The translations under genes were made by a program, and so were the position numbers. The notes under the pieces are model-generated. The model ran no database searches, was not told the origin of the DNA, and was given only the letters and a program-made list of their open reading frames with translations. From the IMG/VR virus record IMGVR_UViG_3300029922_000001, positions 377,499 through 441,498 of that record: a stretch of DNA of 64,000 nt, one strand, 5' to 3'. This document shows, piece by piece, positions 22,486-63,763 of the stretch (position 1 is the first letter of the stretch; each line of letters begins with the position of its first letter).

Positions 22486-22778
22486 TGGAATTATTTGGAT
22501 TTTTAGCTAGAAAGAATAGATGGTCAAAAGAAACATTTCCAACAGTTACTGTTGATGGTGTTCTCAATCATATTGTAGAAGAGATAAAAGAGATTAAAGC
22601 TAAACCTGATGACTTAGAAGAATGGATTGATTTAATACTATTAGCATTTGATGGAGTACATAGGGCAGGTTTCACGCCTCATGAGTTAATTAAAATGTTA
22701 GAGTATAAGCAAGATAAGAACACTAAGCGCAATTGGAATGCGGTTAATTCAGAAGGTTATCATAAACACGTTGAGTAA
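22485..22778 (+). CDS. dATP/dGTP pyrophosphohydrolase domain protein (DUF550, MazG-like)
   Basis: WSKETF....GVLNHI.EE..EI...P.DLEEWIDLILLAFDG..RAG......L..K..KN..R.W. Confidence 0.85.
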   Translation: MELFGFLARKNRWSKETFPTVTVDGVLNHIVEEIKEIKAKPDDLEEWIDLILLAFDGVHRAGFTPHELIKMLEYKQDKNTKRNWNAVNSEGYHKHVE

Positions 22779-22873
22779 TAAGTGTATAGATAAAATCATT
22801 TAGGGGAAATGGGGAAACTCATTCATCTTCATCCCTTTCCGACCATCCCAGAATACTAATAGCTAGAGCTTCC

Positions 22874-22993
22874 CTAATTTTTACAATTGGTTACGTATCG
22901 TGCATCTTTAAGTAAAATAGCAGTAGATCCTACCACATTAGATGGTTCCAATAGATCATAGAGTCTCTGAAGTTTTTTTAGTTGTTCGTTCAT
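22874..22993 (-). CDS. Putative 39-aa small protein behind the only minus-strand copy of the repeated promoter
   Basis: MNEQLKKLQRLYDLLEPSNVVGSTAILLKDARYVTNCKN; ATG 6 nt after TATACT (23005-23000). Below the ORF track cutoff. Confidence 0.55.
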   Translation of the reverse strand: MNEQLKKLQRLYDLLEPSNVVGSTAILLKDARYVTNCKN

Positions 22994-23051
22994 GATATAA
23001 GTATACCTTAATTTTGAGTGTTGGGGATTTTTAAAAAAGTCAATAAAAGTA

Positions 23052-23079
23052 TTGACAAATGATTAATTTGTGGTATACT
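23052..23079 (+). promoter_or_regulatory. sigma-70 promoter TTGACA-16-TATACT with extended TG
   Basis: TTGACA 23052-57, TG at 23071-72, TATACT 23074-79; in tandem with the CCCCAA promoter at 23128. Confidence 0.7.
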
Positions 23080-23166
23080 AAAAACAATCTCATGCGGGGA
23101 TGTTCGGAAGTCAAGGCGACTAAAGAAAATCCCCAACACAAAAATTTGAGGTATACTGGACACACA

Positions 23167-23649
23167 ATGGAAAATACTACAACTGTTACGGAAAAGTCTC
23201 GACGTGGGCGAAAGCCTCTAACCTTCATCGGTTTTCTCTCATTTGCGGATGCAAAGGCATATGTACAGGGTCTAAATATCACTTCTATCAAGGCATGGAA
23301 TGAGTGGTGCAAGACTGATGCGCGACCTGAGAGTGTACCTGCTGCTCCTGGTCTAACTTATCGTGAGGATGGTTGGGTTGGAATGCCTGATTTCCTTGGT
23401 TACACTGCTTCTGGTCGTGGTCGTCCTCTTGGTAGCAAGAACAATACAGTAGTTGATGTAGTCACTACTGAAGTTCTCAACGCTGCTGATACTTATGCTG
23501 CTTCTGTAGTTGTTGGAGATGAAGCTGCTGAAGTTGCTACTGGTGATGTTACGACTATTGAGGATGCTGTTCTTATCAATCTCATTGATAATATTCCTGA
23601 CGTAGTTGCTGAAGTTCTTGCTGAGCAAGAAGCTGCAAACGTCGCCTAA
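23167..23649 (+). CDS. AT-hook / phage-integrase-repeat-like putative DNA-binding protein with acidic tail
   Basis: RRGRKP - FLSFADAKAYVQGLNITS..AW.EWCK...RP..VPAAP...Y...GW.G..DFLG - GRGRPLGS; paralog of 45605..46111. Confidence 0.7.
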   Translation: MENTTTVTEKSRRGRKPLTFIGFLSFADAKAYVQGLNITSIKAWNEWCKTDARPESVPAAPGLTYREDGWVGMPDFLGYTASGRGRPLGSKNNTVVDVVTTEVLNAADTYAASVVVGDEAAEVATGDVTTIEDAVLINLIDNIPDVVAEVLAEQEAANVA

Positions 23650-23670
23650 TCAAGCGTAAATAACAACAAT

Positions 23671-23713
23671 AAAGTGCAAGCTAGGGATTAAAAAAATTCT
23701 CTACTTGCACTTT
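23671..23713 (+). terminator. Hairpin after 23167..23649
   Basis: AAAGTGCAAG...CTTGCACTTT. Confidence 0.6.
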
Positions 23714-23904
23714 ACTATCTCATTGGGGTATAATAATAGAAGTTATTAATTTATTAGTAACTAATCTTTATCAATGAGGATAGGGATAGCACACAAAAGA
23801 ATATGAACGACGCTCCCAGGTAAGTGAGTGTTGTCATATCAGTGTTGCACAACAATATGATTTAATTTCGATTATAAGAAGTTGGATCAAACGATAGGAG
23901 AACA

Positions 23905-24486
23905 ATGAAATTGACAAAATTTTTACCAGTGGTTGCATTATTGACATTATCTTGTGGAAGTACCTTGTCCGAAGGTCAAACACATAAATTATCATTTACT
24001 GCTCATCCAATAAAGAAAACGCATTTACTCTATGAGAAGTTAACTTCTAAAGTTGTAAAGATAGATGACCGTAAAACATTCGACAAGCGCAAGAACATTG
24101 CCAAGAAGATTGAGTTACGGTTTCGTAAGAGAGGTATTAATGACAAGAGGGCTATTATAGGCGCTTGGGTTAATGCTTGGCATGAATCTGAATTTAATCC
24201 AAAAGATGAATATTACGGTTGTAAGGGGTTATTCCAATTACTAAGTGATCATTCTGATCATTGGTTATACAATGCAGATCGCAACATAGATATTTTACTT
24301 AATGAGGAACCTTATAAGCCACGTATTGACAAGTGGTACATATGGGTAAAGAAACATCCTCATGCTTCTGTTAGAGAAGTTACAGTGAAATTTGCTACAG
24401 ATGTAGAACGCTGTGCAAAACGATTTAGAGCAAGAAGAGGGGTTACCGCTATTCATTGGATGAAGGTAATCAATTCTGAATCATAA
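23905..24486 (+). CDS. Lysozyme-like / lytic transglycosylase-fold lipoprotein
   Basis: Lipobox TLSC; AIIGAWVNAWHESEFNP (catalytic ES), KGLFQL, later F...VER; AGGAG SD. Confidence 0.65.
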   Translation: MKLTKFLPVVALLTLSCGSTLSEGQTHKLSFTAHPIKKTHLLYEKLTSKVVKIDDRKTFDKRKNIAKKIELRFRKRGINDKRAIIGAWVNAWHESEFNPKDEYYGCKGLFQLLSDHSDHWLYNADRNIDILLNEEPYKPRIDKWYIWVKKHPHASVREVTVKFATDVERCAKRFRARRGVTAIHWMKVINSES

Positions 24487-24501
24487 GACTTATAATAAGT
24501 C

Positions 24502-25187
24502 ATGAACATTGATTTATACGACGTTAAAGAATCTTCAGTGCAGCCAAATTGTATTAGAATTTGGCATCCTGAAGATCAACCTTATGATTTTCCTTTTGGA
24601 GATTATCCAAATAAAGATAGAAAATGTCTTTGGGTAATTGAGTCACCTAAAGACTTTGGTGGTTTCCCAGGTACTGAGTATTTATTCTATTCTGGTTTAG
24701 GTGGTGATACTGATAAACTAGAGATGGAAGATTCTATTATCTACTTTGTGTATGATCGTAGTAATAGAAGTGTTTGCGGTGATAATTGTCCATTTGAGAT
24801 TTCTAATGATGATTGTTGTTGTAGTATTTAAAATCCCAATAAGGAAAATCTAGGTATACTCTATTCATATGATGAATCTTTGTTTGAGGCAGAATAATGA
24901 TTAGAGTGACCTTTGAAATTCCTGATGGGAATTTTGTAATCCCCAAGAAACAAAAGGTATATACAAAAGGTGGTGGACAACACATGAAAGATGATGCTTT
25001 GTGTGGTGTTATCCAACATATAGATGAATATCTTAATTCGGCTAAAACATATCAACTTCTACAAGCAATGAAATGGTTAGCTAACGATAGTGTTGATAAA
25101 GAAGTGCGTGATGACATGGCTAAAATGCATACTGATATGTATGAACGCATGAAGGATCTTACAATTCTTAGAATTGAAGTCGATTAA
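24502..25187 (+). other. Hypothetical ORFs 24502..24831 and 24897..25187
   Basis: Starts follow -10 hexamers. Confidence 0.65.
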
Positions 25188-25271
25188 TAAAAATCCCCAA
25201 CACCCTGATTTGAGGTATACTAAACAAAAGGATATATCGAAATTGGGATATAGAAAAGGCGATGACAACAA

Positions 25272-29302: not shown

Positions 29303-29326
29303 ACAAACAAGAGGTATACTCCCAAT

Positions 29327-29812
29327 ATGAAAAGAGTGACTGAAATGAACGGCAATAGGGCTAATGGTATTCGTGGATGTAGAATCACAATTTGGGATAA
29401 CAACAGCAATATTATAGATCGTTTTGTTGTTCCTTCTATGTTTGGTGGAGTTAATTATTGCAAAAAATATCCTAATGGTATATATGGTAAAAGATTTTAT
29501 AATGCTTTAAAAGAAATCCCCAATACTGGGATTCGAGGTATACTCCCAGTATGGAGAATAGTCATGTTTCGAACTTATGCGTACATTTTAAAATTAGATG
29601 CTAATTACACAAATGGTGTTATTGATAGGGAATTCACGGAAGTATCTAATGAAGAAATTCAGTTCTTAACAAAGAAATCATCTAAGGAAAAGCCACTCAC
29701 TCCATTACAATTTAAGTTTGGTGATATGTTCACTTCTAATATCTATTTAGATGGTGATGAATACATTAACACAGAAGATGGTTTAGTTCCTATTGAAGAA
29801 ATCATTCAGTAA
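29327..29812 (+). CDS. Hypothetical protein containing an in-frame internal promoter copy (possible fusion of two cassettes)
   Basis: Codons EIPNTGIRGILP are the promoter element 29515-29544. Confidence 0.55.
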   Translation: MKRVTEMNGNRANGIRGCRITIWDNNSNIIDRFVVPSMFGGVNYCKKYPNGIYGKRFYNALKEIPNTGIRGILPVWRIVMFRTYAYILKLDANYTNGVIDREFTEVSNEEIQFLTKKSSKEKPLTPLQFKFGDMFTSNIYLDGDEYINTEDGLVPIEEIIQ

Positions 29813-29944
29813 GGGAAAGTCTCAGCGTTGAGATCTCCTTTATTTTCCCTATTTCCTTGGATGGTGTTTATCTATACACTAATTAATTGAATTATTCGAA
29901 CAATTCGAAATCCCCAATAGAAGAAATTGAGGTATACTCTGATC

Positions 29945-31180: not shown

Positions 31181-31243
31181 AAAATCCCCAATAAGGAAAA
31201 TTGAGGTATACTAAACACAACGAACGGAGAATACGAAAACAAA

Positions 31244-34465: not shown

Positions 34466-34512
34466 ATTCTAAGAAAATCCCCAACAATGGGGATTCGAGG
34501 TATATTAATTTT

Positions 34513-35777: not shown

Positions 35778-35779
35778 GA

Positions 35780-35812
35780 TTCAGGGAATGCAAATTCCCT
35801 GAATTAATTTTT
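35780..35812 (+). terminator. Intrinsic terminator
   Basis: TTCAGGGAAT-GCAA-ATTCCCTGAA plus T tract. Confidence 0.8.
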
Positions 35813-36105
35813 TAGCTTTTTATTGAGAACCATCTACTCTATTAGTGTATAGATAAAAGGTTTCCCCGAAAATGGGGAAACCTCCGAAATCCCAGCATTG
35901 ATAAGTCAATTACTCACAGCTAAAGCAGTGGGCTTGTTTTTGGTCGTGATAGGGGTTGCAGTCAGCACCATGACAATATTAGTATTGGGTTGGGTTGTAG
36001 GCATTGGGGTATTATTATTATTGTTTGCTATGGTTAACTGGTTTGTCAACATCTGTTGTCCACGTAAAATCCCCAATAGGTGAATTGAGGGTATACTAGA
36101 AACTT

Positions 36106-36178
36106 GTCCCGGTAGCTCAGTGGATAGAGCAACAGCCTTCTAAGCTGTGGGTCGCAGGTTCGAATCCTGTTCGGGACG
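36106..36178 (+). tRNA. trnR: tRNA-Arg (anticodon UCU), CCA not encoded
   Basis: Canonical cloverleaf: GTCCCGG/TCGGGAC, GCTC-AGTGGATA-GAGC, ACAGC-CTTCTAA-GCTGT, GCAGG-TTCGAAT-CCTGT; own promoter with -10 at 36092-36097. Confidence 0.95.
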
Positions 36179-36202
36179 CGAGATTTATGGTATAATAACA
36201 TC

Positions 36203-41999: not shown

Positions 42000-44799
42000 A
42001 TGAAAGTAAGAGCTAATTCGAGTTATATTTATCACCCTTGTCTTTTGGATGTTTGCGATGGTAGAACAGACCTAGTAAAAGGTGATCTTGTGGTAGTTAA
42101 GAATCTACCAGGTTGTCCTAAGTGTAATATAATGAATCATGCACACGTCTATAAAGATGATAAATTTGCTGGTCTAGTTTGTTGCGCTTCATTGTATTCT
42201 CCAAAGGAATACCCTAAGTTGCTTGCCGAATGGGAAGCAAGGAATGCACAAAATGCTTAAAAAAGTACATAACTTCACCATTAAATTGGTGATTACTATT
42301 ATATTGGGAGTAATGTTACTGCCAATGATTGCATCTTGTGTTAAAGTGATTCCAGCTTTGCATCCTTGGGGAATTGGACCATTAAAATGTCACTATCTTG
42401 TGACTATAATCCCAAAGTATGAGCAAAGAAAAATTGTTGATGAATTGGAACAACCAGGACCATGTTATCACAATAACCATAAGAAGTGATGTATAACGGA
42501 ATATATGAAGAAGAAAAAAACTCATATATTCCGTTTTCATTTTGATGCAACATTAGTAGATGTTGATGTAGAAGCTTTAAACATTAGAGAAGCTTTTCGT
42601 ATTATGAACAAAGAACATCCTGAGTATAGTACAGGATTTATGATATTACGAAAAGATGAATCAGGATCTTGGATTCAGATTGATTAGTGTATAGATGAAA
42701 GGTTTTCCTGAAAATGGGGAAACATAAATCCCCATTAATCAAAATTAAGGTATACTTTGTTTATGATTACGTTTACACATGAAGATGGGAATGTTTTACA
42801 CCTATCAACTGTTACAGATAAGGAATTCTATCTCAAACATAAAGAAGTTTACTTTGATGATGAGCCAGAAATCATACCTCATTGTAGTGGTGTTATTATT
42901 AGGCATGGTCACGATATTTGGATTGTAGAACCTTTTAATCACTTTAGCGGATATCACTATTCATTCGCTAAGGGGAGGCTAGAAAAGCATTTAACACCCC
43001 AACAGAATGCACTTAAAGAAGTATGGGAAGAAAGCGGTTTAATTGTCACTATTGATGGTTATGTTGGCGATGTTCTCAATAATAGATTTTACACTGGTGT
43101 TGCAATTGGTGGAAGTCCCAATAAGTTTGATTGGGAAACTCAAGCTGTTCATTTAGTCGATATTCCAATGGCTAGAAGTTTATTTGAGCATCAAGGTAAG
43201 CCTATTCCGATTCAAGGACTAGAATTATTTGAACAGTGGCTAGAAAGAAATCCCCAACCATAAAATTTGAGGTATACTAAGATTATGAATTGGAAAGTAC
43301 GTTATTGGATTTTATCTGCTGCTTTACTTCTTAGTATTGTTACATCTTTGGGTTGTGGAGATGAATCACGATCAACATTCAGCCTTACACTAGCTAACAC
43401 TCTTTTCCCAACTGCTCAAAATAAGGTAGTAGAAGGTGAAGGTGTGACATTTGAAGTTATTCTAGGAAATAAGATAAGAAAGTTATTCCTAGTAGACTAT
43501 AACAGTAATCCTATTATTACCTGTATTGAAGGTTGTGGAGAAACACGATAATGTTGAATTTTATCAAAGCTAATAAATGGAATTTAGTTATCATGGCATT
43601 TGTAATTGTGATTGCGATTAATCTTGCTGGATATATTAAACAACATGGTCCTATCTTACCTATTCCTTTACAAGTTAGCAACCGTGGTAGGACGTTTAGA
43701 GAATTAAGTGTAGAATATACAGATGTAAAATCATCAATGATAGAAGATGAAAATGAAATGAAATATCATCTTCAGGATATTAAAACTGGCGAACGATTCT
43801 GGACTTATGATTTGAATGGTGATGGAGCATTGTATCCAGAATGAAAGTACTTTATAGCTACATTGATCAGTATGGCACCAAATTTGAAATAAGGGAAGCA
43901 CTTCCTGAAGGTTATTCTTGTTGGCTAATTCTATCTGAAAAAGACGGTGGAATTACTAGACAATGTGGTTTTCCTTTGGAAAAGATTCTTGAGTTAATTG
44001 AAGAGAATAATCAAATGCAAGGAATTATTAAAAAATTAATGGAGAATAAGAAATAATGTTTATTTATCATCTGTTTAAAAACATCGTTTACAATGCAACT
44101 ATTACGGTATGTGTCTCTATTCTAATGCTAGGTGTCTATAGTATTAAAATTGCATTTACTAGTTTCTTGATTTTTCTATGTGTTTTGTGTCTACTTGATG
44201 GCATCATTGGTTACTATAAAGAACGTAGAAAATCCCCAACAAAGAATTAAAAGGTATACTTTGATCATGAACTTATGGAAAATCTTTAAAAAATATTTTT
44301 TCTCAAATTTGCGTTTTAAATTTATCGCTACGCTATTTTTGTCAGCAATTCTTGCTGCTTGTGGTTTACATTTAATTGACATAATTATTGTTGCCACTAT
44401 TTATTTTATTGTATGGTGCTTTTGTGGTGTTTTGGCAATGCTTTTATAGTTATCAAAAAGGAGTGAATAATATTGGAAATTTCTAACGATTACATGGTTT
44501 TGCTTTTTAATGCCCAACATCAATATCGTCGTAACTGGTTGGGAAGTGGTACAGATCAAAAGGTATATAATCTAAAATATCAAGGTAAAACCTTTAGCGA
44601 GATTCAAGAACAATTTAAAAATTGTAAAATCTATGTTTATAACAAAACTAAAAATATGGATGTTCTAATTTATGACAAAAATGGTAATGTCCTTAGTCGT
44701 TTTGGTAGTAATTACCAATTAAGCGAATTTGAAGTATTAATTGAACCTATTGACACAAGTGTTAAATACTTTGTGTGGTTTGGTAAAAAATTACAATAA
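42000..44799 (+). other. Small hypothetical ORFs, several with membrane or lipoprotein features: 42000..42260, ~42253..42489, 42505..42687, 43285..43551, 43551..43844, 43841..44056, 44056..44250, 44267..44449, 44473..44799
   Basis: Co-directional packing; hydrophobic helices and SLGC/IASC lipobox-like motifs. Confidence 0.6.
42763..43263 (+). CDS. Second Nudix hydrolase
   Basis: SFAKGRLE..LT...NALKEVWEESG Nudix-box variant; WETQAV. Confidence 0.85.
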   Translation: MITFTHEDGNVLHLSTVTDKEFYLKHKEVYFDDEPEIIPHCSGVIIRHGHDIWIVEPFNHFSGYHYSFAKGRLEKHLTPQQNALKEVWEESGLIVTIDGYVGDVLNNRFYTGVAIGGSPNKFDWETQAVHLVDIPMARSLFEHQGKPIPIQGLELFEQWLERNPQP

Positions 44800-47797: not shown

Positions 47798-47811
47798 GCC
47801 ACAATCTAACG

Positions 47812-47850
47812 AAATGAGACTGAGGGAATAATCTCTCAGTCTCATTTTTA
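47812..47850 (+). terminator. Intrinsic terminator
   Basis: AAATGAGACTGAGGGA-ATAA-TCTCTCAGTCTCATTT plus T tract. Confidence 0.8.
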
Positions 47851-47971
47851 TATATTTAAGCGTATAATTCAAATCCTTTATACGTTTTAGTGTATAGATC
47901 GAAGTGATAGACGAAAATGGGGAAATCTCCGACAACATGCTAAAATCTCCGAGAACATGCTATAATAAAGT

Positions 47972-48361
47972 ATGGAACTATTTATTTCAATCACAGGTCA
48001 AGCGGCAACAGGTAAGACCACAATAGCTAAAATCATAGAAGATGCTCTACGCGATAAAGGCTTTAAAGTCATTCAGAACGACATAGATTTGACTGGTGAT
48101 GTAATTAAACCCGATGGATGGGTAGAACGTAACACAGAAGGAATTAAGGGCAAAGAAACCACTATTAGCATTGATACAGTAGGTGTACGTAGAGGAAGAG
48201 AGAAGGTTACTTGTCCAAAATGCGGATATTGCCCAAAATGCGGTTGGGATACAACAGAAGAAGATCTTTGTTTGTTTTGCGGTGGTGTTCTTGGATCACC
48301 TAAACGCAGTGCTGACATTGGAGTAACCACTGACAAAGAGATTATCTTAGGTATGGGATAA
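47972..48361 (+). CDS. Small P-loop protein with C-terminal Zn ribbon
   Basis: ISITGQAATGKTT Walker A; CPKCG.CPKCG...CLFCG. Confidence 0.6.
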   Translation: MELFISITGQAATGKTTIAKIIEDALRDKGFKVIQNDIDLTGDVIKPDGWVERNTEGIKGKETTISIDTVGVRRGREKVTCPKCGYCPKCGWDTTEEDLCLFCGGVLGSPKRSADIGVTTDKEIILGMG

Positions 48362-54426: not shown

Positions 54427-54453
54427 AACCGGAGAGAATCCGGTTTTCTTTTT
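54427..54453 (+). terminator. Intrinsic terminator
   Basis: AACCGGA-GAGAA-TCCGGTT plus T tract. Confidence 0.75.
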
Positions 54454-54569
54454 GCTTCCACGATTCATAATTCCTATATATTAGTGTATAGATGCATAGG
54501 AATTATGAAAATGGGGAAATAATGATCAGTAAAAATCCCCAATGATCAAAAATGAGGTATACTAAGATC

Positions 54570-54965
54570 GTACAAGACGGTAAGGTGGCTGAAAGGAAAT
54601 CCCCAAAAGTCTATAAACTAATTTAGAATTGAATACATATAGTAACTTTCAGGGTGTGCGGTGACGGGTTAAAATCGTACACACCTTTCAATGTACACGA
54701 TAAATCTTTGTGGCTCAACGAATAAGATGCAGTGAGAGTTTTATCCCGTTTTAGAATCTACCCTAGTGAATAAGGTCAAAATCCCCAATGAGATGGCAAA
54801 TCTCCCAGATAAGGTAATCCATGTATATCCATGATATGATCGTTGACCACGTATCGTCTAAATGTGTAAAGAACTGATGAAGATCCTTTAGCCCATTTAT
54901 GGGTTATAAATAGAAAGGTAATGAGGGTTGTTGTGCGGCTTAAATCGTATAGTCAGCCCTTTAAC
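54570..54965 (+). ncRNA. Candidate structured ncRNA (about 390 nt) in its own promoter cassette
   Basis: The promoter is followed by GTA instead of ATG; no ORF of 60 aa or more; two related hairpins at 54651-54688 and 54924-54962. Confidence 0.45.
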
Positions 54966-56497
54966 TTTTTATCCCCAATAAAAGAATTACAGGTATACTC
55001 CAATTATGAGATTCAAGACAACAGTTAGCAAGTTTGAGAATGGTGAATGGACTATCATTGAGGGTTCAGTTTATCGTAATTGGTCAAAGCAACCAACTGA
55101 GAAAATGATCAGCAATGCAATTGCCAGTATCTTGAAAGACCTACAGACTATCATTCCTGGTTTTAGGGAATATGGAGTGGAGAAGATCATTTAAGAATCC
55201 CCAATAGGGGAATTAAGGTATACTCTAAATGTGATGAATAGTTATCATCCAAAAAGATAAGGGTTTAAGTTTATTTTTGCAAAAGCTGTACGTTGGTTAG
55301 TAACCAATAAAAGAATATTCTAATAACTAAAGAAGAAAGATTGATAGAGTAGCGTCTATTAAAATAAATGTATATCCTTATCACATTTTCCCCAACACTC
55401 AAATTAGAGGTATACTATATCCATGAAAACATACAATCTTGGAGATTTGGTTATTGTCAAAGGAACAACGAATAATCCATATGTAACTGGTGGAATTTCA
55501 GGACCTGATAGAGCAAGGGTCATAAACTCTCTAAAAGAGCAAAAGACAGTAAGTGACGATTATGAATTCTGGATTGCTCCTACTAATGGTGGTGCATTTA
55601 AAGTGCAACAGCATCTTATCTCTTTCCAAAATCCAATAGTGTTGCAGATTCATGCTCAAAATCCCCAATAAAAGAATTAGAGGTATACTAGAAACATGGA
55701 AAACTTTAATCAGAAACTTCAAGACTTTCTCGCTCTAGCTGAAAAGGAAACTCAACACCGAATGCATATGGAAGGTTATGACAGTCTTCTAGCAAGTGCG
55801 GAAAAGGCAGGACGACGGGCATACTATTACTTTACCTGTGAACCAGGATTGAAGTTTGTCAAAGTGTGGAAAGAAGCACAAGGTGACAAGTTTATTCACA
55901 GTTTTGTTGAAAAAAATACTGGAATCATCTATGGCGCGGATAGTTGGAAGAAACCCAATTTTAAGAGAGCATACGGCACTCTAGACACCATTAATGATTG
56001 GTATTGGGGTGATTATTACGGGGTAAGTAAGACAGGGGTTAATACACTAGTACCAAAAGAAAAGCGTCGTAAGCCTTGATAAATCCCCAATAGGGGGAAT
56101 TAAGGTATACTACCGGTATGGAAAACTTCAATACCGGTGGGTCTGTTTCTCTAGCCGCTTTACATCAACGTCAAGCGGCTACTAAGGCTTTATTAGAGTC
56201 GTTGTATGGTGAAGTCTTAGCTAAAAAGGTTCACACTGATCGTAAATATTTAAATTTACTATTACATGTTCTTGATTCTGATGGTAAAGATCTAGAAGCA
56301 GTGGAGAATTTACGTACAATGCTTGAAAAGGATCTGGTATACTACTAACATGAGTGACGCAAGAATCGAATAGATTGGTTTAATCTGTGGAACCTTAATT
56401 GCAGCATTGGCTGCTGGCTTTGGATTGAATATCCTTTTAGCTTTGATTTTAGGTCTTTAAAAATACCCAATAAGAAAATCGAAGGTATACTCTATAT

Positions 56498-56815
56498 ATG
56501 AAACAACATGAACTGTATGATGAACTATGTTTGACTGAAGCATCACAAGCAGAAGGACTTAGCTTTGATGTTGGTTTTCATTCAGATTTAATTGAATTAT
56601 ATAGACTTGATGTTAAATCTGAGTTTAGATGGCAAGGACGCGCTACTAGATTCTTAAAGGAATTAACTGCAATTGCTGATAGGAATAATTTACCTATTGA
56701 GTTAGAAGTTGGTTCTGGTACTGATGAAATAGACATAGTAGAGGATCTTCCAGCTTTTTACAATAAGTTTGGTTTCGAGTGGGTGGATACTTATATGCGT
56801 AGAATCCCCCAATAA
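56498..56815 (+). CDS. GNAT-like acetyltransferase
   Basis: IEL..L.V..EFR.QG.AT.FL.EL...AD.....I.L, L..FY.KFGF. Confidence 0.75.
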   Translation: MKQHELYDELCLTEASQAEGLSFDVGFHSDLIELYRLDVKSEFRWQGRATRFLKELTAIADRNNLPIELEVGSGTDEIDIVEDLPAFYNKFGFEWVDTYMRRIPQ

Positions 56816-57113
56816 AAAAATTAGAGGTATACTCTAAATATGAACATTCTAAAGAAGATTCTCAAAGCTATTGGATGTAAACAATCTACGCTTTGTAAAT
56901 TTGGTTATCATACACTAGCTTGGTATTCAAAAGCTGATTGTGAAATGTATTTCATTCAGAAGCGCAAATTTGGTCCTTTAGTAGAGTGCGGTTGTTGTCG
57001 TAAGATTTTACATATTGAAGAAGTTAACGTTGATGAGGTTGAGTATCTTCATGGATTATATCCAATAAATTAAGAATTATCCCCAATAGGAATTTTAAAG
57101 GTATACTCTAAAC

Positions 57114-57479
57114 ATGAAAGTTTTAATATCTGATGATGACCAAAATCTTTTAGATAGTATGGTTCGCTATTTAGAGCGTTATGATATCGAAGTACATGGT
57201 TTTCTTTACAATGATCTTGCTATGAATGATCTTGAGGCAGGTTTTACACCTGACTTCATTTTGACAGATTATGACTATGGTTGCGGACGACGAAATGGAG
57301 TAGATTATATTAAAGCACTTAGGTCAAAACATTTTACTGTACCTATCGCTTTAGTTTCAGGTTCAAGTAAACAACAATTAATGAAGGAAATCGAAGGTAT
57401 TGACAATGTTGTTGTAATTGAAAAATCAATGAATTTATGTAAAATGATTTTTAGGTTTCTTAATTTAAATCCCCAATAG
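57114..57479 (+). CDS. Single-domain response regulator (CheY-like receiver)
   Basis: KVLISDDD acidic pocket, PDFILTDY phosphoacceptor, NG...I..LR, PIALVSG, EK. Confidence 0.9.
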   Translation: MKVLISDDDQNLLDSMVRYLERYDIEVHGFLYNDLAMNDLEAGFTPDFILTDYDYGCGRRNGVDYIKALRSKHFTVPIALVSGSSKQQLMKEIEGIDNVVVIEKSMNLCKMIFRFLNLNPQ

Positions 57480-57503
57480 GAATTTTAGAGGTATACTCTA
57501 AAC

Positions 57504-57704
57504 ATGATTAAAAAGACTCTTCGACAAGGATTCATTGTTGACAAGCACGGTGTTCAACGATGGTATAAGGATGATTTTATGCATAATCTTAATGGTCCTG
57601 CGGCTGTTTTCCCTGATGGTAGGGTAGCTTACTACATTAACGGTACACGAATTCCACGTAAGACGTTCGGACAAATGCTGGCTAAAGCAAGGAAAAAGAA
57701 GTAA
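57504..57704 (+). CDS. Small protein with a W-Y...H..NGPA...DG....Y.NG repeat unit
   Basis: Repeat motif common in phage hypothetical proteins. Confidence 0.6.
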   Translation: MIKKTLRQGFIVDKHGVQRWYKDDFMHNLNGPAAVFPDGRVAYYINGTRIPRKTFGQMLAKARKKK

Positions 57705-57931
57705 TGCCAGAAACCCCACCGCCAATTACAAGTATGCAACTTCAAGCTTTTTGCTTACTATTTCAACAATCTCTTACTTAATGTATTGGGGAACAAATTC
57801 GAAACAAGATACTTGTTTTCTTGTTCTTACTATTGCATTTTTGGTGTTGGGTCTAAGTGTACTTATGTGCAAATACCTGATACCACCAGACTAGTTTTCC
57901 CCAATAAGAAAATCGAAGGTATACTCTTTTC

Positions 57932-58366
57932 ATGGCTAATTTTCCTACTCTGCAAGACGTGCATTGGGTTTCAATTGAAGAGATTTTAAACTCTTGGCTT
58001 TCAATTGATAGTAAAGCACTTAAAACATCTACGGACATTTCAAAAGAGTTGACCTATAAAGAATGGGAGATACTACTTACAAGAAAACGTGAAGAGTGTG
58101 AATATGAAGAGATTAGACCTATCATTGAACAAGAGGGGTTTAGAATGCCTTTGGTTTACGAAATTCAAGATCGAACTGGAAAATTCTGTCATTGTCAGGG
58201 ACATCATAGACTAGCTTGTGCAATAGATTTAGGATATAAATATTTGCCATACGTTCATTATCAATGGGCTGATGGTGGTTGTTGGCACATTGCTGATTTT
58301 GAGTGGGATACATTAATCCATCCTGAAAATCCCCTGCCTACTAATCCAATTTTGACTGATAAATAA
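57932..58366 (+). CDS. Stand-alone ParB/Srx-like domain protein, paralog 4
   Basis: QGHHRLACAIDLGYKYLPY; C-terminal LIHPENPLPTNP is identical to paralog 1. Confidence 0.75.
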   Translation: MANFPTLQDVHWVSIEEILNSWLSIDSKALKTSTDISKELTYKEWEILLTRKREECEYEEIRPIIEQEGFRMPLVYEIQDRTGKFCHCQGHHRLACAIDLGYKYLPYVHYQWADGGCWHIADFEWDTLIHPENPLPTNPILTDK

Positions 58367-59204
58367 AAATCCCCAATGGGGAAAACCGAGGTATACTTAG
58401 AACATGAAAACACTTTCAACACAGACAAGAGATCGAAAAGGACTACTCACTGCTTACGGATTTGTCGATGGTGGCACCGAAACAAGACAAAAGGATAATA
58501 CAAAGATCACGATTCATCGTCCTGAAGATACAGAAAACTACATTCTGACAGGAATGTACGACGGCAAGAAGGTTGGAATTGACGCAGGTAAGAGTCTGGA
58601 GAATGCGCGAAAGATGGTAAGCAAGTATCTCCGGGGCGAAATCAAGTAAGTTTATATCTGTCATCTGTAGAAACAATAAGACAATGACTCCCCCTAAAGG
58701 GGGAAATCCCCAATGCCTCTAATTGAGGTATACTATATTTGAGGAAATCGAAAACTATGAATAACTACGATCTATGGCAAACAACAGAATGGCAACGAAA
58801 AAATGGATTTGCATCTAAAGGTGATAAAGTAACTTTTAAAGCCAACGATGGTTATGATGGTGACATTCAACGCGCTAAAGATGCGGGACTAGTAATTGGT
58901 GAAAGTTATATTGTCACAAGAACAGAAGTTGGACGTTGTAATAGTTATCATATTCTAGAGGGATTTGGTTACAGTTTCAATATTGTAATGTTTGAACAAA
59001 TTCCAGATCCTAAAGCGATCATCAAGTGTGTAGTAACCGAAATTGGACAAGATACGCTCCGTGGAGACTACAAGGCAGAGGATTTTGCTAATTTGTTACG
59101 TACAGCGGCAGATGCAATTCTAAGTCCTGATAGTAATCATTACTATTATGAATTCACGTTCACAAACGGGGATTGTATCTATCAAATCACTGCAAAGAAG
59201 TAAG

Positions 59205-59235
59205 AATAGGGGAACTCTTCGGAGTTTCCCTATTT
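59205..59235 (+). terminator. Intrinsic terminator whose 3' arm is the left box of the 40-bp element
   Basis: AATAGGGGAACTC-TTCG-GAGTTTCCCTATT. Confidence 0.8.
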
Positions 59236-60761
59236 CGGTTCGAGTTCCTTATCTATACACTAATAAGGAACATTAAAACGTACACTTAAAATCCCCAATA
59301 GATGAATTTAAGGTATACTCTATTCATGGGAAAGAAACCAATTACACCATCTAAGCCACCATTTGAGGTTGGAGATATAGTCTCTAGCCGACATGGTGAA
59401 TATGCTGGGTTACTGTTAAAAATAGAATCTATTTACCCTTCTGAAAGATATGGTTCTGGATATGGCGCTCGTTGTGTTGGAGCTATCACTGGAAAATATA
59501 TTAAAGAAAGCTATGTTGATTCTGCATGGTTTGTGAAAGTAGAAGATCCAAAATTGTCACCTTATCGCGTTGAATTATTATTGCGAAAGTCAGACAACTA
59601 TTTCCATATTTTGGCTGCTGAAGCGATCAAGCAACTACGACTTCAAAAATCCCCAATAAAGAAATAAGAGGTATACTCTGATCATGGCACAAAAACAAAA
59701 GGTCACCGTGGATACGCCTTATTTGAATAGTTGGGCGCATCAACAGGAACAAGAGCAAAAAGCTATTGAAGATGAAAGTAAATTGCCATTCAAACAGATG
59801 ATTGAAGCAAGAAAGAAGCGTTTGTCATCGACTATCGAAAGTGCCAAAAAATGTACAGTCATTTTTGAGAACCAAAACATTGCTTGGTACATGAAACTTT
59901 TTTACTGTGACAGAGAAAGCGCAAGACAGGAACTTGGTTATCGTCCAGCTATTGCAACTTTAACTTTCGAAGAATATCGCAATAGTGCTTTACGATAATC
60001 CCCAATAGAAAATTAAGAGGTATACTTAAAACATGAACACTCTCCCGAACATCGTTCTCGCCGGTTTGAATCGCTATCAGAATCCAGCCCCTAAGAAGGT
60101 AATCACGAGGGAACAACAGATTGAGCGGCTTCTCAATCGTTATGCGTCGGCTGTTTTGACTTTTCGCAAGCCTGAAACCTGGAAGGTTTGGGCAAAAGAG
60201 AGGGACGCGATTATTGCCGAAGCTGGTAAGCTAATCGGCAAGAACTACAACGGTAACAACGTTGTAACAATCTGGGAGCATGAGACTCCAAAGGATGAAT
60301 TGGACTACATTGTTGCAAAAGAGTATCACACTTGGAGCAATAATCCGTGCCGTCCTTGGAATTCAGGCGACTCGGAGCATCTAGAGAATCGTGTGGTTTT
60401 TGATATCGCATTTCTTGCGAAGAAGAAATGTTATCACATTTACTACGATCACTCGTAAGGGGGAGAAATCCCCAATAAAAGAATTGGAGGTATACTAAGA
60501 TCATGTCACATTTCGAAAATGAATATCGTTCTCCTGGTTACTGGCTTGATGCCAGAGAAAGAATGGAATCAGGCATGTGTCCTGAATGTGGCGAATGGTT
60601 GAAACTTGAAGAAATTTGCCCATGTAAAGAAGATTGCGATTGTGCTACTGAGTACGCTAATATGCAAAGAGATTATCTTGCAGCAGATTGGCAAGACGCA
60701 GAAGAAGGATTGGGAAGTTACGTAAAATCCCCAACGATCTAATTAGAGGTATACTCAAAAC

Positions 60762-61022
60762 ATGGAAGACTTTGGAGATTTCAGCGAATATGGCGATCAG
60801 GATGCTTTAGATAGCATTGACGACTACAACCGATTTGAAGAAAGGGAAGTATTCAACGATCAAGAAGGACGTGACCCTGATGATGAATTTGAAGATGATG
60901 ACGAAAGGGAAGAATTCGAAAGGGAAGAATTCGAAAACTTTTTCGAAAATGAACCAGATTGCACGGCTGATGACAATTGGGCAATGGGAACTTTACAAAT
61001 AGATCCCGATTTTGGTTACTAA
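60762..61022 (+). CDS. Extremely acidic small protein
   Basis: About 36 D/E, 5 R and 0 K in 86 aa (hand count); own promoter and terminator. Confidence 0.7.
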   Translation: MEDFGDFSEYGDQDALDSIDDYNRFEEREVFNDQEGRDPDDEFEDDDEREEFEREEFENFFENEPDCTADDNWAMGTLQIDPDFGY

Positions 61023-61024
61023 GC

Positions 61025-61063
61025 AAAATAAGGAACTTTCAGAAAGTTCCTTATTTTCTTTTT
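61025..61063 (+). terminator. Intrinsic terminator
   Basis: AAAATAAGGAACTTT-CAG-AAAGTTCCTTATTTT plus T tract. Confidence 0.8.
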
Positions 61064-61510
61064 AGGTTTCTATGTATCTTATCTATTCTTTCGGAGTATT
61101 AGTGTATAGATGTACACGTTCGGGGAAAATGGGGAAAGCTACGAAAGCTCCGAACTCCGATTTCCCCAATAACAGAATAAGAGGTATACTCTATTCATGA
61201 AGCAGATCACAAAAGAGCAAGCTCTAGAACTTTTCAAAGCAAACAGAGAGTATGCGGATGACAACGTTTTTACCATTTGCGCATCCAATATGGACCCAAA
61301 TGGAATGTTTGCAATGGAAGTGGAAGGTTGGCGCATTCGCGAAAATACGTTTACTTCAGTTCCATTGTATTCGGAAGATCCTAGCGTAGAAGCTTTTGAG
61401 CGGTATCTTGCAAACTTTAGCTTTTACAACTGTGATGAAGAAACAGGGAAAGACATAACCTATTGGGTTTGAGAAATCCCCAACACTCAGATTAGAGGTA
61501 TACTACACAC

Positions 61511-61981
61511 ATGGCACACATGGCACACACGAGCTATTTGAATTCAGTTTTCGACAAACGATCTAATGCTGCTGCAATCAAATTCATCTGTAGAGCGTTG
61601 GAACTGGTAGATTGCGATGCTATTGCATTTACTGGAATGTCTGGGGCACTAATGGCTCCAAAAATTGCAGAACTCACAGGTAAGAAACTTGTAATGGTTC
61701 GAAAATCGGGGGATGATTCTCATTCTAGCTTTAGAGTTGAAGCCACAACAACGAAAGTGTATAAGTATGTCATTATTGATGATTTGATTTTCTCTGGCAG
61801 AACAGTCAATCATATCATCAAGACTCTGAAAGAGAGTAGTAATTTTCAGCTTGCTAAGTGTCAAGCTATCATTATGTACGCGGAAAAGGGCGAAACAAGC
61901 TATAAGACGGTACATAATGGCTTGAAAATCTACAACCGTAAGCAAGGATTGCCACGTAAGAAAACCCCAAAGCCTGTTTAA
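61511..61981 (+). CDS. Type I phosphoribosyltransferase
   Basis: DAIAFTGMSG...A..IA...GK.LV.VRK; PRPP-binding YVIIDDLIFSGRT. Confidence 0.85.
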   Translation: MAHMAHTSYLNSVFDKRSNAAAIKFICRALELVDCDAIAFTGMSGALMAPKIAELTGKKLVMVRKSGDDSHSSFRVEATTTKVYKYVIIDDLIFSGRTVNHIIKTLKESSNFQLAKCQAIIMYAEKGETSYKTVHNGLKIYNRKQGLPRKKTPKPV

Positions 61982-61997
61982 CAGGTATACTCTATTT

Positions 61998-62529
61998 ATG
62001 AAAAGCCGACGTTCACTAAATCGAGTTCTACGCGACAGTCTTGGAAAGGGACTCACCAAAGAAGAAGTTAAGATTCTTGCACTTGAAAATATGAGACTAT
62101 TAAACTCAAACTTCGATAAGAATTTGGTTGATGCTTTCATGACAGAAGCGCAACTTTTACAATGGGCAACTGCAACAAGTAAAGTAGAAGGAGTTTTTGA
62201 CGATAATCATATTATGAGTCATGATATGAAGTATCGTTAAGGGGATGGAAAATCCCCAATAAAAGAATAAGAGGTATACTCAAATCATGGAAACGACCAA
62301 AATCAACAAAGACGAAGCTACAAAGCTAATCGACGGTTACAAACTCACACTCTATGGACGAAATTTGGTTCGACATCGTAGAGGGTTGAAGACTCTGGAG
62401 GAAATGTACAAAGATTGCGCTATCGCAGAAGTCTTGATTCGCGAACTTAACACGGCATTGTCGAATGTTTCTAATGACACAGAAATGAAGTTGTTCATGG
62501 GTGGTTTGGAAAATATCATCAACTTCTAA
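61998..62529 (+). other. Hypothetical ORFs 61998..62240 and 62287..62529
   Basis: Promoter-led. Confidence 0.65.
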
Positions 62530-62684
62530 GAAATCTAAGGAGAAGGGGCGAAAGCTCCTTTTCCCTATTTTCTTAGTTTGGGTCTATCTATACACTAATT
62601 AAGAGTAAGACTATCATCTAGAATAATTGCAATATTGATTCAATTAGAAATCCCCAATGAGTCAAGGCAAGGTATACTATGTTC

Positions 62685-63587
62685 ATGGCACAATCGAAAG
62701 ACACACCGAGAGACGTAGTAGAGAAACTTCTTGAACTGACAAAAGGCGACTTACTTCCTTGGAATTGCCCTTGGATGCGACGACAACCTAAGAATCCAAT
62801 TAGTGGTACGCGATATCGCGGAATCAATTGGTTACTTCTAACTTGGAAGATGGGCGAATTTGATGGAGAAAACCGATTCGTCACCTACAAGCAGTTGCAA
62901 GAATTCTCCAAGAAGCAAGTCAAGTCGATGTTTATTAAGGCAGGTTCTAAGGGAAGCATGATCATTAAATACGGAATGTTCCAAAAAGATAAGGACATGG
63001 GAAATGGCACTATCAAGGAAGTTTCAATACCGTACATGCAAACGTGGTCCGTGTTTAGTGTTACTCAAGTAGACGGTTGGGATATCCCAAATACTGAAAC
63101 TTATGGCACAAAAGCCCTTCCTGAAGTCAATGCACTAATTCAAAAAATGGGCATTACTGTCAAGAGCGGGAATCAAGCCGCATATTCACCTAGTGGCGAT
63201 TATCTGATTATGCCACCCGCTGATACGTTTAAGTCACCAGAATTGCATCTGGCTGTTGCCATCCATGAACTGATTCATTGTAGTGGACATAAGGACCGCT
63301 TGAACCGAAAGAGTATGGAAGAGGGCAAAGACCAGAAATATGCAACTGAGGAAATGGTTGCGGAAATTGGAGTAGCTATCGCGATGGCAGAACTTGGAGT
63401 AGAGTATCAAATTCAACAATCTGCTGATTACATTAAGGGGTGGTGGAGTGTGATTCAATCCAACCCTAAGAACTTTATATGGGCTGTAAGTCAAGCCCAA
63501 AAAGCAGTAGAATACGTTCTTGGAACCACTATCGAAACGGTTGAATTAACAGAATCAGGAACCGAAAGTTTCGCCTACGTAGGTTAA
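62685..63587 (+). CDS. ardC: ArdC-like ssDNA-binding antirestriction protein with zincin-like domain
   Basis: PW..PW, N..SG..YRGIN...L, FVTYKQ, G.KG, A.Y.P..D...MP....F, HELIH.SGH..RLNR, YA.EE.VAEIG, SA.YI..W. Confidence 0.9.
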   Translation: MAQSKDTPRDVVEKLLELTKGDLLPWNCPWMRRQPKNPISGTRYRGINWLLLTWKMGEFDGENRFVTYKQLQEFSKKQVKSMFIKAGSKGSMIIKYGMFQKDKDMGNGTIKEVSIPYMQTWSVFSVTQVDGWDIPNTETYGTKALPEVNALIQKMGITVKSGNQAAYSPSGDYLIMPPADTFKSPELHLAVAIHELIHCSGHKDRLNRKSMEEGKDQKYATEEMVAEIGVAIAMAELGVEYQIQQSADYIKGWWSVIQSNPKNFIWAVSQAQKAVEYVLGTTIETVELTESGTESFAYVG

Positions 63588-63590
63588 GGA

Positions 63591-63632
63591 TTAAAAGAGT
63601 AGAGTTAAAATCCTACTCTTTTAATTTTATTT
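63591..63632 (+). terminator. Intrinsic terminator
   Basis: TTAAAAGAGTAG...CTACTCTTTTAA plus T tract. Confidence 0.75.
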
Positions 63633-63763
63633 ATTTAAGCCTCATATTATAATTTTTAAGAATATTAGTGTATAGATCAAACGGATCATGAATAATAGGG
63701 AAATTTGGTAATTGATGAATTCTTAAAAATCCCCAATAAAGGAAATTAAGGTATACTAAGATC

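What the first reader, a model, noticed from the sequence alone, without database searches (positions are those of the whole stretch)
22778..63703. A second 40-bp bipartite element on both strands, spaced a few kb apart at operon borders
Seen: ten copies of TTTCCCYATTT-N15-ATCTATACACTAAT (3 forward, 7 reverse), all exactly 40 bp, intergenic and mostly beside terminators. In the forward copies the left box forms part of a terminator-like hairpin arm; in 35841 and 42683 the spacer folds back on the GGGGAAA box. Gaps are about 7.0, 6.0, 6.9, 5.2, 6.6, 4.7, 1.9, 1.5 and 1.1 kb. No ORF start follows at a fixed distance, so it does not behave like the gene promoters. Inference: a protein-binding site for genome organisation, segregation or stepwise injection, a nicking or recombination site, or an antisense/late promoter that silences early cassettes.
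Basis: partly seen in the sequence, partly recalled or inferred. Interest (0 to 1): 0.8.

Follow-up and report, generated by a model that had tools for sequence, protein, structure and literature searches.

The report
Second promoter-like motif, mostly antisense
A 40-bp two-box DNA motif between gene blocks at one end of a huge (over 441 kb) uncultured peat phage is real and conserved in related phages; it is most likely a second kind of promoter read with a phage-made sigma factor, and most copies point backwards into the terminator of the preceding block.

Summary
In detail: ten copies of TTTCCCYATTT-N15-ATCTATACACTAAT (3 forward, 7 reverse), none expected by chance. They are the only copies in the 441,498-bp contig, and no degenerate copies exist. 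The element is conserved in four related metagenomic lineages (44 copies plus 3 diverged ones). The spacer is always 15 nt. In orthologous pairs the boxes are 92% identical, against 52% for the spacer and 56-64% for the flanks. The same orientations bracket the rIIB-rIIA block in three lineages. Every copy lies between an intrinsic terminator and the next leaderless 'gene promoter'. The decisive feature is an asymmetric clear zone. Next to the right box no hairpin or promoter hexamer lies closer than 16 nt (mode 27-29 nt, both orientations), whereas on the left-box side neighbours overlap the box or lie 5-6 nt away. This fits an RNA polymerase footprint: left box about -41..-31, TATACA at -12..-7, start about 2 nt past the element, the geometry of the phage's other two promoter classes. 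The genome encodes three sigma-like proteins and no polymerase of its own. Best reading (about 0.5): a second sigma-type promoter class, with forward copies driving the next block and reverse copies firing short antisense RNAs into the preceding terminator. Main rival: a site for another DNA-binding protein. No transcript data were available.

The parts
22778..22817 (-). Element copy 1 (1 mismatch). It lies between convergent genes: a MazZ-like + strand gene ending at 22778 and a 39-aa minus-strand ORF. No hairpin terminator is present here.
29844..29883 (+). Element copy 2, forward. The left box closes hairpin 29813-29849. The gene promoter at 29911-29938 lies 27 nt downstream. This copy heads the block that contains rIIB and rIIA.
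35841..35880 (-). Element copy 3, reverse. It lies 35 nt after bidirectional terminator 35778-35805, at the end of the rII/DUF7227 block. The spacer and left box form an internal hairpin (35861-35880).
42683..42722 (-). Element copy 4, reverse. The left box lies 6 nt from gene promoter 42729-42756 and forms an inverted repeat with its -35 hexamer (42714-42735).
47886..47925 (-). Element copy 5, reverse (1 mismatch). It lies 37 nt after terminator 47811-47848 and is followed by two tandem 20-nt repeats (47926-47965).
54480..54519 (-). Element copy 6, reverse. It lies 34 nt after bidirectional terminator 54427-54445. The left box lies 16 nt from gene promoter 54536-54563.
59225..59264 (+). Element copy 7, forward. 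The left box is the 3' arm of hairpin 59206-59233. Gene promoter 59292-59319 lies 27 nt downstream.
61098..61137 (-). Element copy 8, reverse. It lies 40 nt after terminator 61025-61057. The left box lies 25 nt from gene promoter 61163-61190.
62560..62599 (+). Element copy 9, forward. The left box overlaps terminator 62539-62564. Gene promoter 62651-62678 (ArdC-like gene) lies 51 nt downstream.
63664..63703 (-). Element copy 10, reverse (1 mismatch). It lies 41 nt after hairpin 63593-63622, at the end of the ArdC-like gene. The left box lies 26 nt from gene promoter 63730-63757.
19656..20549 (+). Sigma-factor-like ORF of 297 aa (phrog_351), 2.2 kb upstream of the first element. It is one of three candidate readers; the other two lie outside the window at G000 59271-59876 (+) and 229405-229983 (-).

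Best explanation
The element is a second, highly specific sigma-type promoter class of this phage lineage. It would be read by the host RNA polymerase core carrying one of the three phage-encoded sigma-like factors.

Geometry, read in the direction TTTCCC to ACTAAT:
- The left box lies at about -41..-31, the position of a -35 element.
- TATACA lies at -12..-7.
- CTAAW is the discriminator.
- Transcription would start about 2 nt past the element.

Forward copies (3 of 10 in the window) lie in tandem, 27 nt upstream of a leaderless gene promoter. They would give a second, leadered transcript of the following block: the rIIB-rIIA block, the block at 59.3 kb, and the ArdC-like gene.

Reverse copies (7 of 10) lie just downstream of the intrinsic terminator of the preceding block and point back into it. 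They would make RNAs that reach the end of that, often bidirectional, hairpin at +47 to +77. Polymerase bound or firing there would oppose read-through into the next block, or yield RNA antisense to the 3' end of the upstream messages.

Shown: the motif, its conservation, its positional grammar and the presence of sigma genes.
For: 1. Two boxes at an invariant 15-nt spacing in all 44 copies from six locus sets. CCC at positions 4-6 and TATACACT at positions 30-37 also hold in a diverged lineage.
2. Orthologous pairs: boxes 92-93% and 91% identical, spacer 52%, flanks 56-64%.
3. Same architecture as the phage's other two classes. The gene promoter is TCCCCAAY-N11-RGG-TATACT-N6-ATG, 86 copies. 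The class used in the rest of the genome is TG-TATAAW-N6-ATG. In the element, TATACA-N6 lands on a purine in 31 of 44 copies.
4. Asymmetric clear zone. On the right-box side the nearest hairpin or promoter hexamer is never under 16 nt away; 37 of 39 are at least 24 nt away, with the mode at 27-29 nt, whatever the neighbour and in both orientations. On the left-box side neighbours overlap the box (18 copies) or lie 5-6 nt away. The sequence of the clear zone is not conserved.
5. Three sigma-like ORFs, all aligning to the sigma-factor profile phrog_351 over the same part; Pfam finds region 2 and region 4 in one and region 4 in another. No phage RNA polymerase, MotA or AsiA was found.
6. All-or-none scores, as for phage-specific promoters.
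7. Orientation is conserved at the three orthologous junctions around the rII block in lineages with 57% and 51% rIIA identity.
8. Precedent: a conserved antisense phage-specific promoter in the early region of Phikmvvirus phages (PMC10914365).
Against: - No transcript data: no RNA run was listed, so no start site has been seen.
- Twenty-eight of 44 copies point against all genes, and no conserved ORF follows them.
- Orientation differs in front of the orthologous ArdC-like gene in one relative.
- The TATA core lies at about -70.5/-71.5 from the neighbouring gene-promoter start in both of the commonest arrangements. This would also suit a regulator site.
- The -10-like hexamer has A, not T, at -7.
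- No copy lies upstream of any sigma gene.
- About half of the downstream hairpins lack a good U tract in the antisense direction, so the length of the antisense RNA is uncertain.
Confidence: 0.5

Rival explanations
1. The element is a binding site for a sequence-specific phage DNA-binding protein other than RNA polymerase. Such a protein could be a regulator of the adjacent gene promoter, or a roadblock or insulator protein placed at block borders. It would work in either orientation.
For: - The element occurs in both orientations at equivalent places, between terminator and next promoter.
- It carries about 40 bits or more, far above what is needed to specify a site, and there are no weak copies.
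- The near-palindromic TATA core of the right box lies at about -70.5/-71.5 from the gene-promoter start in the commonest forward (gap 27) and reverse (gap 5-6) arrangements. Others lie at -81.5 and about -91, roughly one helical turn apart.
Against: - Only 7 of 28 reverse copies have the 5-7 nt gap (6 at 5-6 nt, 1 at 7 nt); the rest lie 16 to more than 200 nt from the next promoter.
- A symmetric protein footprint does not explain why 24-29 nt must stay clear beyond the right box, even next to a terminator, while the left box may overlap its neighbour.
- Only about 10 of the 60-odd gene promoters in the region have an element, and those promoters look like all the others.
- No candidate binder was identified. 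There is no ParB_N domain, and Pfam and PHROGs gave nothing for many neighbouring ORFs.
Confidence: 0.25
2. Read on the opposite strand, the right box (TG-TATAGA) is a -10-only promoter of the genome-wide class TG-TATAAW. Most copies then point with the genes, and the left box is a conserved element of the 5' leader.
For: - The reverse complement of the right box differs from TGTATAAA at one position.
- In this reading 28 of 44 copies are co-oriented with the genes.
- In gap-6 copies the leader could fold GGGGA against the UCCCC of the gene promoter.
Against: - In the diverged lineage the change falls inside this hexamer (TATAGA to TATATA), whereas TATACACTAA of the forward reading stays intact.
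- The invariant block would then lie upstream of and across the hexamer, unlike the real class-A sites, which show only weak base preferences (about half A at -21/-20, G at -14/-13) upstream of the hexamer.
- The clear zone lies on the wrong side for this reading.
- The left box and its fixed spacing stay unexplained, and the predicted start falls on no preferred base.
Confidence: 0.07
3. The element is a recombination or mobility site: an attC-, TIR- or PeSL-like junction at which gene cassettes are exchanged.
For: - The region is a mosaic of small-gene cassettes.
- Three gene blocks are bracketed by a forward and a reverse copy.
- In relative L019 a 920-bp gene is inserted 4 nt from the edge of the copy that corresponds to 63664.
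- PeSL terminator/promoter motifs do mediate such shuffling in T4-like phages (PMC2839356, PMC4122927).
Against: - Of about 14 ends of aligned blocks between the window and L019, about 12 fall at gene promoters and one at an element. Three of the four shared elements lie inside conserved blocks.
- No tyrosine or serine recombinase was found in 441 kb.
- The element has no internal symmetry. All genes but one stay on one strand, so no inversions have occurred.
- A forward copy followed by a reverse copy is expected by chance in 29% of orderings.
- The boxes are under purifying selection over deep divergence, which passive homology patches would not need.
Confidence: 0.06
4. The element is a DNA-level site for nicking, for replication start or arrest, or for control of genome injection or packaging.
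For: - The copies are confined to about 41 kb at one end of the contig.
- The sites are directional with an excess of one orientation.
- Motif-specific nicks are known in T5-like and phiKMV-like virions (own knowledge).
Against: - No positive evidence.
- The contig end is not the genome end: a relative's contig and a second contig of the same sample continue the arm with more copies.
- Nick motifs in known phages lie on one strand only.
- The tight grammar with terminators and promoters points to transcription.
- The contigs laid gave no information.
Confidence: 0.05

Closest known systems
PeSL (promoter-early stem-loop) composite terminator/promoter motifs of T4-like phages (PMC2839356, PMC4122927)
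   Same: - Both are short conserved intergenic motifs in an arm of small accessory genes that join a G/C stem-loop (GGGG...CCCC) to a promoter.
- In forward copies here, the left box is the CCC arm plus T tract of such a stem-loop, followed by the promoter-like right box.
- The phage carries T4-type genes: rIIA, rIIB, an Rnl1-like ligase and Y07B.
   Different: - PeSL promoters match the host sigma-70 consensus, point with the genes and are the recombination junctions.
- Here the boxes are unlike sigma-70 and the spacing of stem arm and -10-like box is fixed.
- Two thirds of the copies are antisense, and the recombination junctions are at the other motif, the gene promoter.
Promoters specific to phage-encoded sigma factors (SPO1 gp28 and gp33/34, phiEco32 gp36; own knowledge)
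   Same: - The phage has no polymerase of its own and several sigma genes.
- Its promoter classes are few, near-identical and unlike the host consensus, with fixed two-box geometry.
   Different: - Those classes drive genes. Here most copies face away from genes and into terminators.
- The cognate sigma is not identified.
[quoted passage not shown]
   Same: It is a phage-specific promoter oriented against all genes in the early region and conserved in sequence and position among relatives. It was proposed to stop transcription running into the early genes.
   Different: It is a single copy, read by a single-subunit polymerase, and its transcripts are long. Here there are 10 or more copies, each paired with a terminator.
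Lambda OOP RNA (own knowledge)
   Same: It is a short (77 nt) antisense RNA that starts just beyond the 3' end of a gene, overlaps that end and stops at a terminator.
   Different: It is a single locus read by host sigma-70 and has a defined target (cII). Here the RNA sequences differ at every copy and their existence is not shown.

Membership tests
Sigma-70-family two-box promoter | Two conserved boxes at a fixed spacing that suits sigma regions 4 and 2 | tested here: met
   11-nt and 14-nt boxes with a 15-nt spacer in 44 of 44 copies. With TATACA at -12..-7, the left box spans -41..-31.
Sigma-70-family two-box promoter | A transcript 5' end 5-9 nt after the -10 hexamer | not testable with these tools
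   No RNA run was listed. Only a weak purine preference at the predicted +1, 31 of 44 copies.
Sigma-70-family two-box promoter | A cognate sigma and core polymerase are available | tested here: inconclusive
   Three sigma-like ORFs are present and no phage polymerase was found. Which sigma, if any, reads the element is unknown.
Sigma-70-family two-box promoter | A polymerase-sized, downstream-skewed footprint | tested here: met
   Indirect evidence: a clear zone of 24-29 nt beyond the right box only, in both orientations.
Sigma-70-family two-box promoter | Points at a gene or RNA gene | tested here: not met
   Met for 16 of 44 copies. The other 28 face a terminator and the 3' end of an opposing gene, and no conserved ORF follows them.
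PeSL composite terminator/promoter motif | A stem-loop joined to a promoter, between small accessory genes | tested here: met
   The left-box CCC pairs with the upstream flank in 24 of 44 copies, against 16-23% in controls. In one search a strong hairpin overlaps or ends on the left box in 12 of the 16 forward copies.
PeSL composite terminator/promoter motif | A host sigma-70 consensus promoter, co-oriented with the genes | tested here: not met
   The boxes are unlike TTGACA/TATAAT, and 28 of 44 copies are antisense.
PeSL composite terminator/promoter motif | Serves as the junction of cassette exchange | tested here: not met
   About 12 of 14 block ends between the window and L019 lie at gene promoters and one lies at an element.
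Site-specific recombination site (attC, inversion site, transposon end) | A recombinase or transposase is present and the site has dyad symmetry | tested here: not met
   PF00589 and PF00239 were not found. The boxes are not symmetric.
parS / KorB-type centromere or silencing site | A palindromic site plus a ParB-family protein | tested here: not met
   No ParB_N match. The site is asymmetric.
Described structured RNA (Rfam) | Match to a covariance model | tested here: not met
   Only tRNAs reach the gathering score in the window, L019 and L020.

The most novel reading that the evidence does not exclude
The reverse copies, each paired 27-29 nt from a terminator hairpin that is often bidirectional, form a dedicated boundary device. 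A sigma-polymerase (or another protein) parked or firing head-on just behind each terminator would seal the block against read-through. Together with the forward copies, this would divide a megaphage's accessory arm into 1-7 kb units that can be switched separately from the roughly 60 constitutive leaderless gene promoters inside them. That would be a phage-encoded transcriptional insulator system built from antisense promoters.
Probability: 0.2. Interest if true: 0.7.

Novelty: new variant of a known kind. Interest (0 to 1): 0.5.

Why it matters
Very large phages carry long arms of small accessory and anti-defence genes, and how these arms are regulated is almost unknown because the phages are uncultured.

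Here the sequence alone shows three promoter-like classes and three phage sigma-like genes. It also shows a strict grammar (terminator, then element, then leaderless promoter) that is kept across lineages sharing only 51-57% protein identity.

If the element is a sigma-specific promoter whose majority use is antisense and terminator-coupled, it offers a simple, testable model for how a megaphage times or insulates blocks such as rIIA/rIIB and an ArdC-like anti-restriction gene. It would also supply compact orthogonal promoter, sigma and terminator parts.

If it is instead a site for another protein, it marks an unknown high-specificity DNA-binding system.

Tried and rejected
- **Exact and degenerate pattern scans of IMG/VR** for the element, the gene promoter and the diverged form gave only chance singletons or nothing.
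- **The search for related loci in IMG/VR** with the RuvB-like and rIIA proteins found no relatives.
- **A scan of GTDB genomes** with the gene-promoter pattern gave 120 single chance matches. No relative and no host clue emerged.
- **RNA runs:** none was listed.
- **Read laying on four peat DNA runs** returned only short unitigs that break at the repeats. There were no variant letters, and the joints were all explained by other copies of the repeats.
- **The full records behind L020 and L034** are not held, so the full distribution in those contigs could not be scanned.
- **Rfam** found nothing at the elements, in the 54.5-55.0 kb gap or in the L020 core.
- **Literature search** for the box sequences found nothing relevant.
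- **Rejected after testing:**
  - Young repeat or chance: excluded by conservation at orthologous sites.
  - Promoter for small ORFs.
  - Same holoenzyme as the gene promoter: the TCCCYA-to-TATAC spacing is 21 nt against 16 nt.
  - T7-like or multisubunit phage polymerase.
  - MotA/AsiA-type appropriation.
  - ParB.
  - Z-base genome, despite a MazZ-like gene: no PurZ.
- **PDB sequence search** with the 297-aa sigma-like ORF was uninformative.

Full report
**Observation.** Seven are exact and three have one mismatch. No match occurred in any of 100 dinucleotide-preserving shuffles. The window is the last 64 kb of a 441,498-bp virus contig from a peat metagenome, with 34% G+C. Allowing five mismatches over the whole contig gives the same ten sites and no others, all within the last 41 kb. 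Neither box alone is enriched elsewhere. A weight matrix built from 44 copies scores the ten sites at 37-50 bits and the next best position in the genome at 6.3, close to shuffled sequence. The motif is therefore all-or-none.

**Surroundings.** All genes but one in the region are on the + strand. It occurs 86 times, all between 341 kb and the contig end, and 85 copies are on the + strand. The rest of the genome uses a -10-only motif, TG-TATAAW, again 6 nt before ATG. Every element lies between the end of one gene block and the next gene promoter.
- In the 400-441 kb zone, five of six strong intrinsic terminators have an element beside them. In the 341-400 kb zone, which uses the same gene promoters, none of five does.
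- In forward copies the left box is itself the 3' arm and T tract of the terminator hairpin.
- Reverse copies follow a separate hairpin that is often bidirectional.
- The blocks hold accessory and counter-defence genes: rIIB and rIIA homologues and DUF7227 between copies 29844 and 35841; an ArdC-like protein between 62560 and 63664; and an Rnl1-like RNA ligase, RlaP, a RuvB-like ATPase, a metallophosphatase and a MazZ-like pyrophosphohydrolase.

**Relatives.** Homologues of the ArdC-like and rIIA proteins led to metagenomic contigs at graded distance. A pattern scan of JGI metagenomes added a 78-kb contig from the same sample.
- L019 (ArdC 90% identical) has 8 copies.
- Two parts of a 69-kb scaffold, L020 and L035 (ArdC 58%, rIIA 57%), have 15 and 3 copies.
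- L021 has 2 copies.
- The 78-kb contig has 5 good copies and one decayed copy.
- In all there are 44 copies, 16 forward and 28 reverse, each with exactly 15 nt between the boxes. The consensus is TTTCCCYATTT(t)-N-RTCTATACACTAAW, and nothing is conserved outside the 40 bp.
- In nine orthologous pairs the boxes are 92-93% and 91% identical, the spacer 52% and the flanks 56-64%.
- In L035 the three junctions around the MazZ-like gene, the rII block and DUF7227 carry the element in the same orientations as in the window. This also holds for the two junctions flanking the rII block in L037 (rIIA 51%, 46% G+C), where the motif has drifted to TTCCCC...GTATATACACTAA; L037 has a third, reverse copy after an unrelated 266-aa gene. 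CCC at positions 4-6 and TATACACT at 30-37 stay in register there.
- A lineage with 34% rIIA identity has neither motif.
- In front of the ArdC-like gene the orientation differs between the window and L020.

**Positional grammar.** Forward copies are followed by the gene-promoter hexamer after 26-29 nt in 11 of the 16 measured; the others are at 32, 37, 42 and 51 (twice) nt. The sequence of that gap is not conserved. Reverse copies have the hexamer 5-7 nt from the left box in seven cases and otherwise 16 to more than 200 nt away. I then measured, in the element's own orientation, the distance to the nearest strong hairpin or gene-promoter hexamer on each side.
- On the right-box side the distance is never under 16 nt. 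It is at least 24 nt in 37 of 39 cases, with the mode at 27-29 nt, whether the neighbour is a promoter (forward copies) or a terminator hairpin (reverse copies).
- On the left-box side neighbours overlap the box in 18 copies or lie 5-6 nt away.
- Gene promoters elsewhere in the arm overlap the preceding coding sequence. The clear zone therefore belongs to the element.

**Mechanism.** A clear zone of about 25 bp on one side only is what an RNA polymerase open complex needs downstream of its start. If TATACA is placed at -12..-7, as TATACT and TATAAW are in the other two classes, four things follow:
- the left box spans -41..-31;
- CTAAW is the discriminator;
- the start falls 2 nt past the element, on a purine in 31 of 44 copies;
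- the next feature begins at about +26.

The genome encodes three sigma-like proteins: an ECF-like one of 201 aa, a SigB/F/G-like one of 193 aa, and a divergent one of 297 aa inside the window. No T7-like or multisubunit polymerase, MotA or AsiA was found. The spacing from TCCCYA to TATAC is 21 nt in the element against 16 nt in the gene promoter. The two motifs therefore cannot be read in the same way.

I conclude, with confidence about 0.5, that the element is a second sigma-type promoter class. Forward copies would add a leadered transcript, with the ATG at about +62, to the block that follows. Reverse copies would transcribe 17-41 nt and then the terminator hairpin of the preceding block, which ends at +47 to +77. 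About half of these hairpins have a U-rich tail in that direction.

What the reverse copies achieve is inference. They could block read-through head-on, make short RNAs antisense to the 3' end of the upstream messages, or compete with a gene promoter only 5-6 nt away. A conserved antisense phage-specific promoter in the early region of Phikmvvirus phages is a published precedent (PMC10914365).

**Rivals.**
- *A non-polymerase DNA-binding protein* is the main rival (0.25). In its favour, the element occurs in either orientation, carries very high information, and has its TATA core at about -70.5/-71.5 from the neighbouring start in both of the commonest arrangements. It does not explain the one-sided clear zone next to terminators, and only a quarter of the reverse copies keep that distance.
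- *Reading the right box on the other strand* as a TG-TATAGA version of the genome-wide class would make most copies sense-oriented (0.07). The diverged lineage, however, changes that hexamer while keeping TATACACTAA. The clear zone lies on the wrong side, and the left box stays unexplained.
- *A recombination or mobility role* is unlikely (0.06). Block ends between the window and L019 fall at gene promoters in about 12 of 14 cases and at an element edge once. No tyrosine or serine recombinase was found.
- *Nicking, replication or injection roles* have no positive evidence (0.05). The contig end is not the genome end, because L019 and the second contig continue the arm.

**Comparison with known systems.** The nearest described anatomy is the PeSL composite terminator/promoter motif of T4-like phages: a GGGG...CCCC stem-loop joined to an early promoter among small accessory genes (PMC2839356, PMC4122927). 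Forward copies look like a PeSL whose stem arm doubles as the -35-like box. The differences are that PeSL promoters match sigma-70, point with the genes and are the recombination junctions. Here that last role belongs to the gene promoters. I therefore class the element as a new variant of a known kind, a phage-specific promoter, and not as a member of the PeSL family.

**Limits.** No transcript data could be obtained. The contigs laid from four peat DNA runs were uninformative. The full relatives' records could not be scanned. Host and temporal classes are unknown.

Noticed in passing
G000 341578-441498 (window about 1-64000): The 'gene promoter' TCCCCAAY-N11-RGGTATACT is followed after exactly 6 nt by ATG in most of its 86 copies, so this whole arm appears to make leaderless messages. 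Its RGGTAT and short spacing recall SigB-type promoters, and one phage sigma is SigB/F/G-like.
   Followed up: partly
G000 0-340 kb and window 16700-22800: A third promoter-like class, TG-TATAAW with no -35 box, lies 6 nt before ATG. It occurs upstream of large, probably structural genes and of the 201-aa sigma gene. A sub-block of the window (17.2-22.8 kb), which includes the 297-aa sigma-like ORF, uses this class instead of the gene promoter.
   Followed up: partly
window 36070-36179: A gene promoter (36070-36097) lies so that its predicted start is about 2 nt before the mature 5' end of tRNA-Arg(TCT) at 36106. The tRNA would therefore be made almost without a leader.
   Followed up: no
window 22874-23027, minus strand: This is the only minus-strand gene promoter in the genome (23000-23027). 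It drives a 39-aa ORF that converges on the MazZ-like gene, with element copy 1 between them.
   Followed up: partly
window 54564-54971: About 400 nt after gene promoter 54536-54563 contains no ORF and no ATG at the start. It holds a hybrid AAATCCCCAAAAGTCTATAAACTAAT (a -35-like box fused to a right-box-like sequence) and two similar GTGCGG...TTAAAATCGTA hairpin regions. It may be a non-coding RNA; Rfam finds nothing.
   Followed up: partly
window 47926-47965: Two tandem 20-nt repeats (TCTCCGASAACATGCTAWAA) lie directly after element copy 5 and overlap a TATAAT-type promoter for the gene at 47972. They may be an operator.
   Followed up: no
L020 11225-11368 and 12077-12231: A conserved core of about 145 nt with a long interrupted hairpin (GTTTCCTAAAA...TTTTAGGAAAC around a GTTTCTTGATCAAGAAAC palindrome) lies twice between a reverse and a forward element that face outwards. 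Rfam gives no match.
   Followed up: partly
contig end, window 63973-64000; L019; L034+L027+L031: The contig stops inside a gene promoter. A relative's contig (L019) runs 7 kb further, and its end matches a 78-kb contig of the same sample at 98% over its last 63 nt; that contig carries more gene promoters and elements. The genome is therefore probably larger than 441 kb, despite the 100% completeness estimate.
   Followed up: partly
window 55500-63800 compared with L019: Differences between the two phages are whole-gene insertions, deletions and replacements whose ends lie at the gene promoters. This is the pattern described for PeSL-mediated shuffling in T4-like phages.
   Followed up: partly
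window 22485-22778: A MazZ-like dATP/dGTP pyrophosphohydrolase (PF04447) is present, but no PurZ-like adenylosuccinate synthetase was found in the contig. There is therefore no evidence for a 2-aminoadenine genome.
   Followed up: yes
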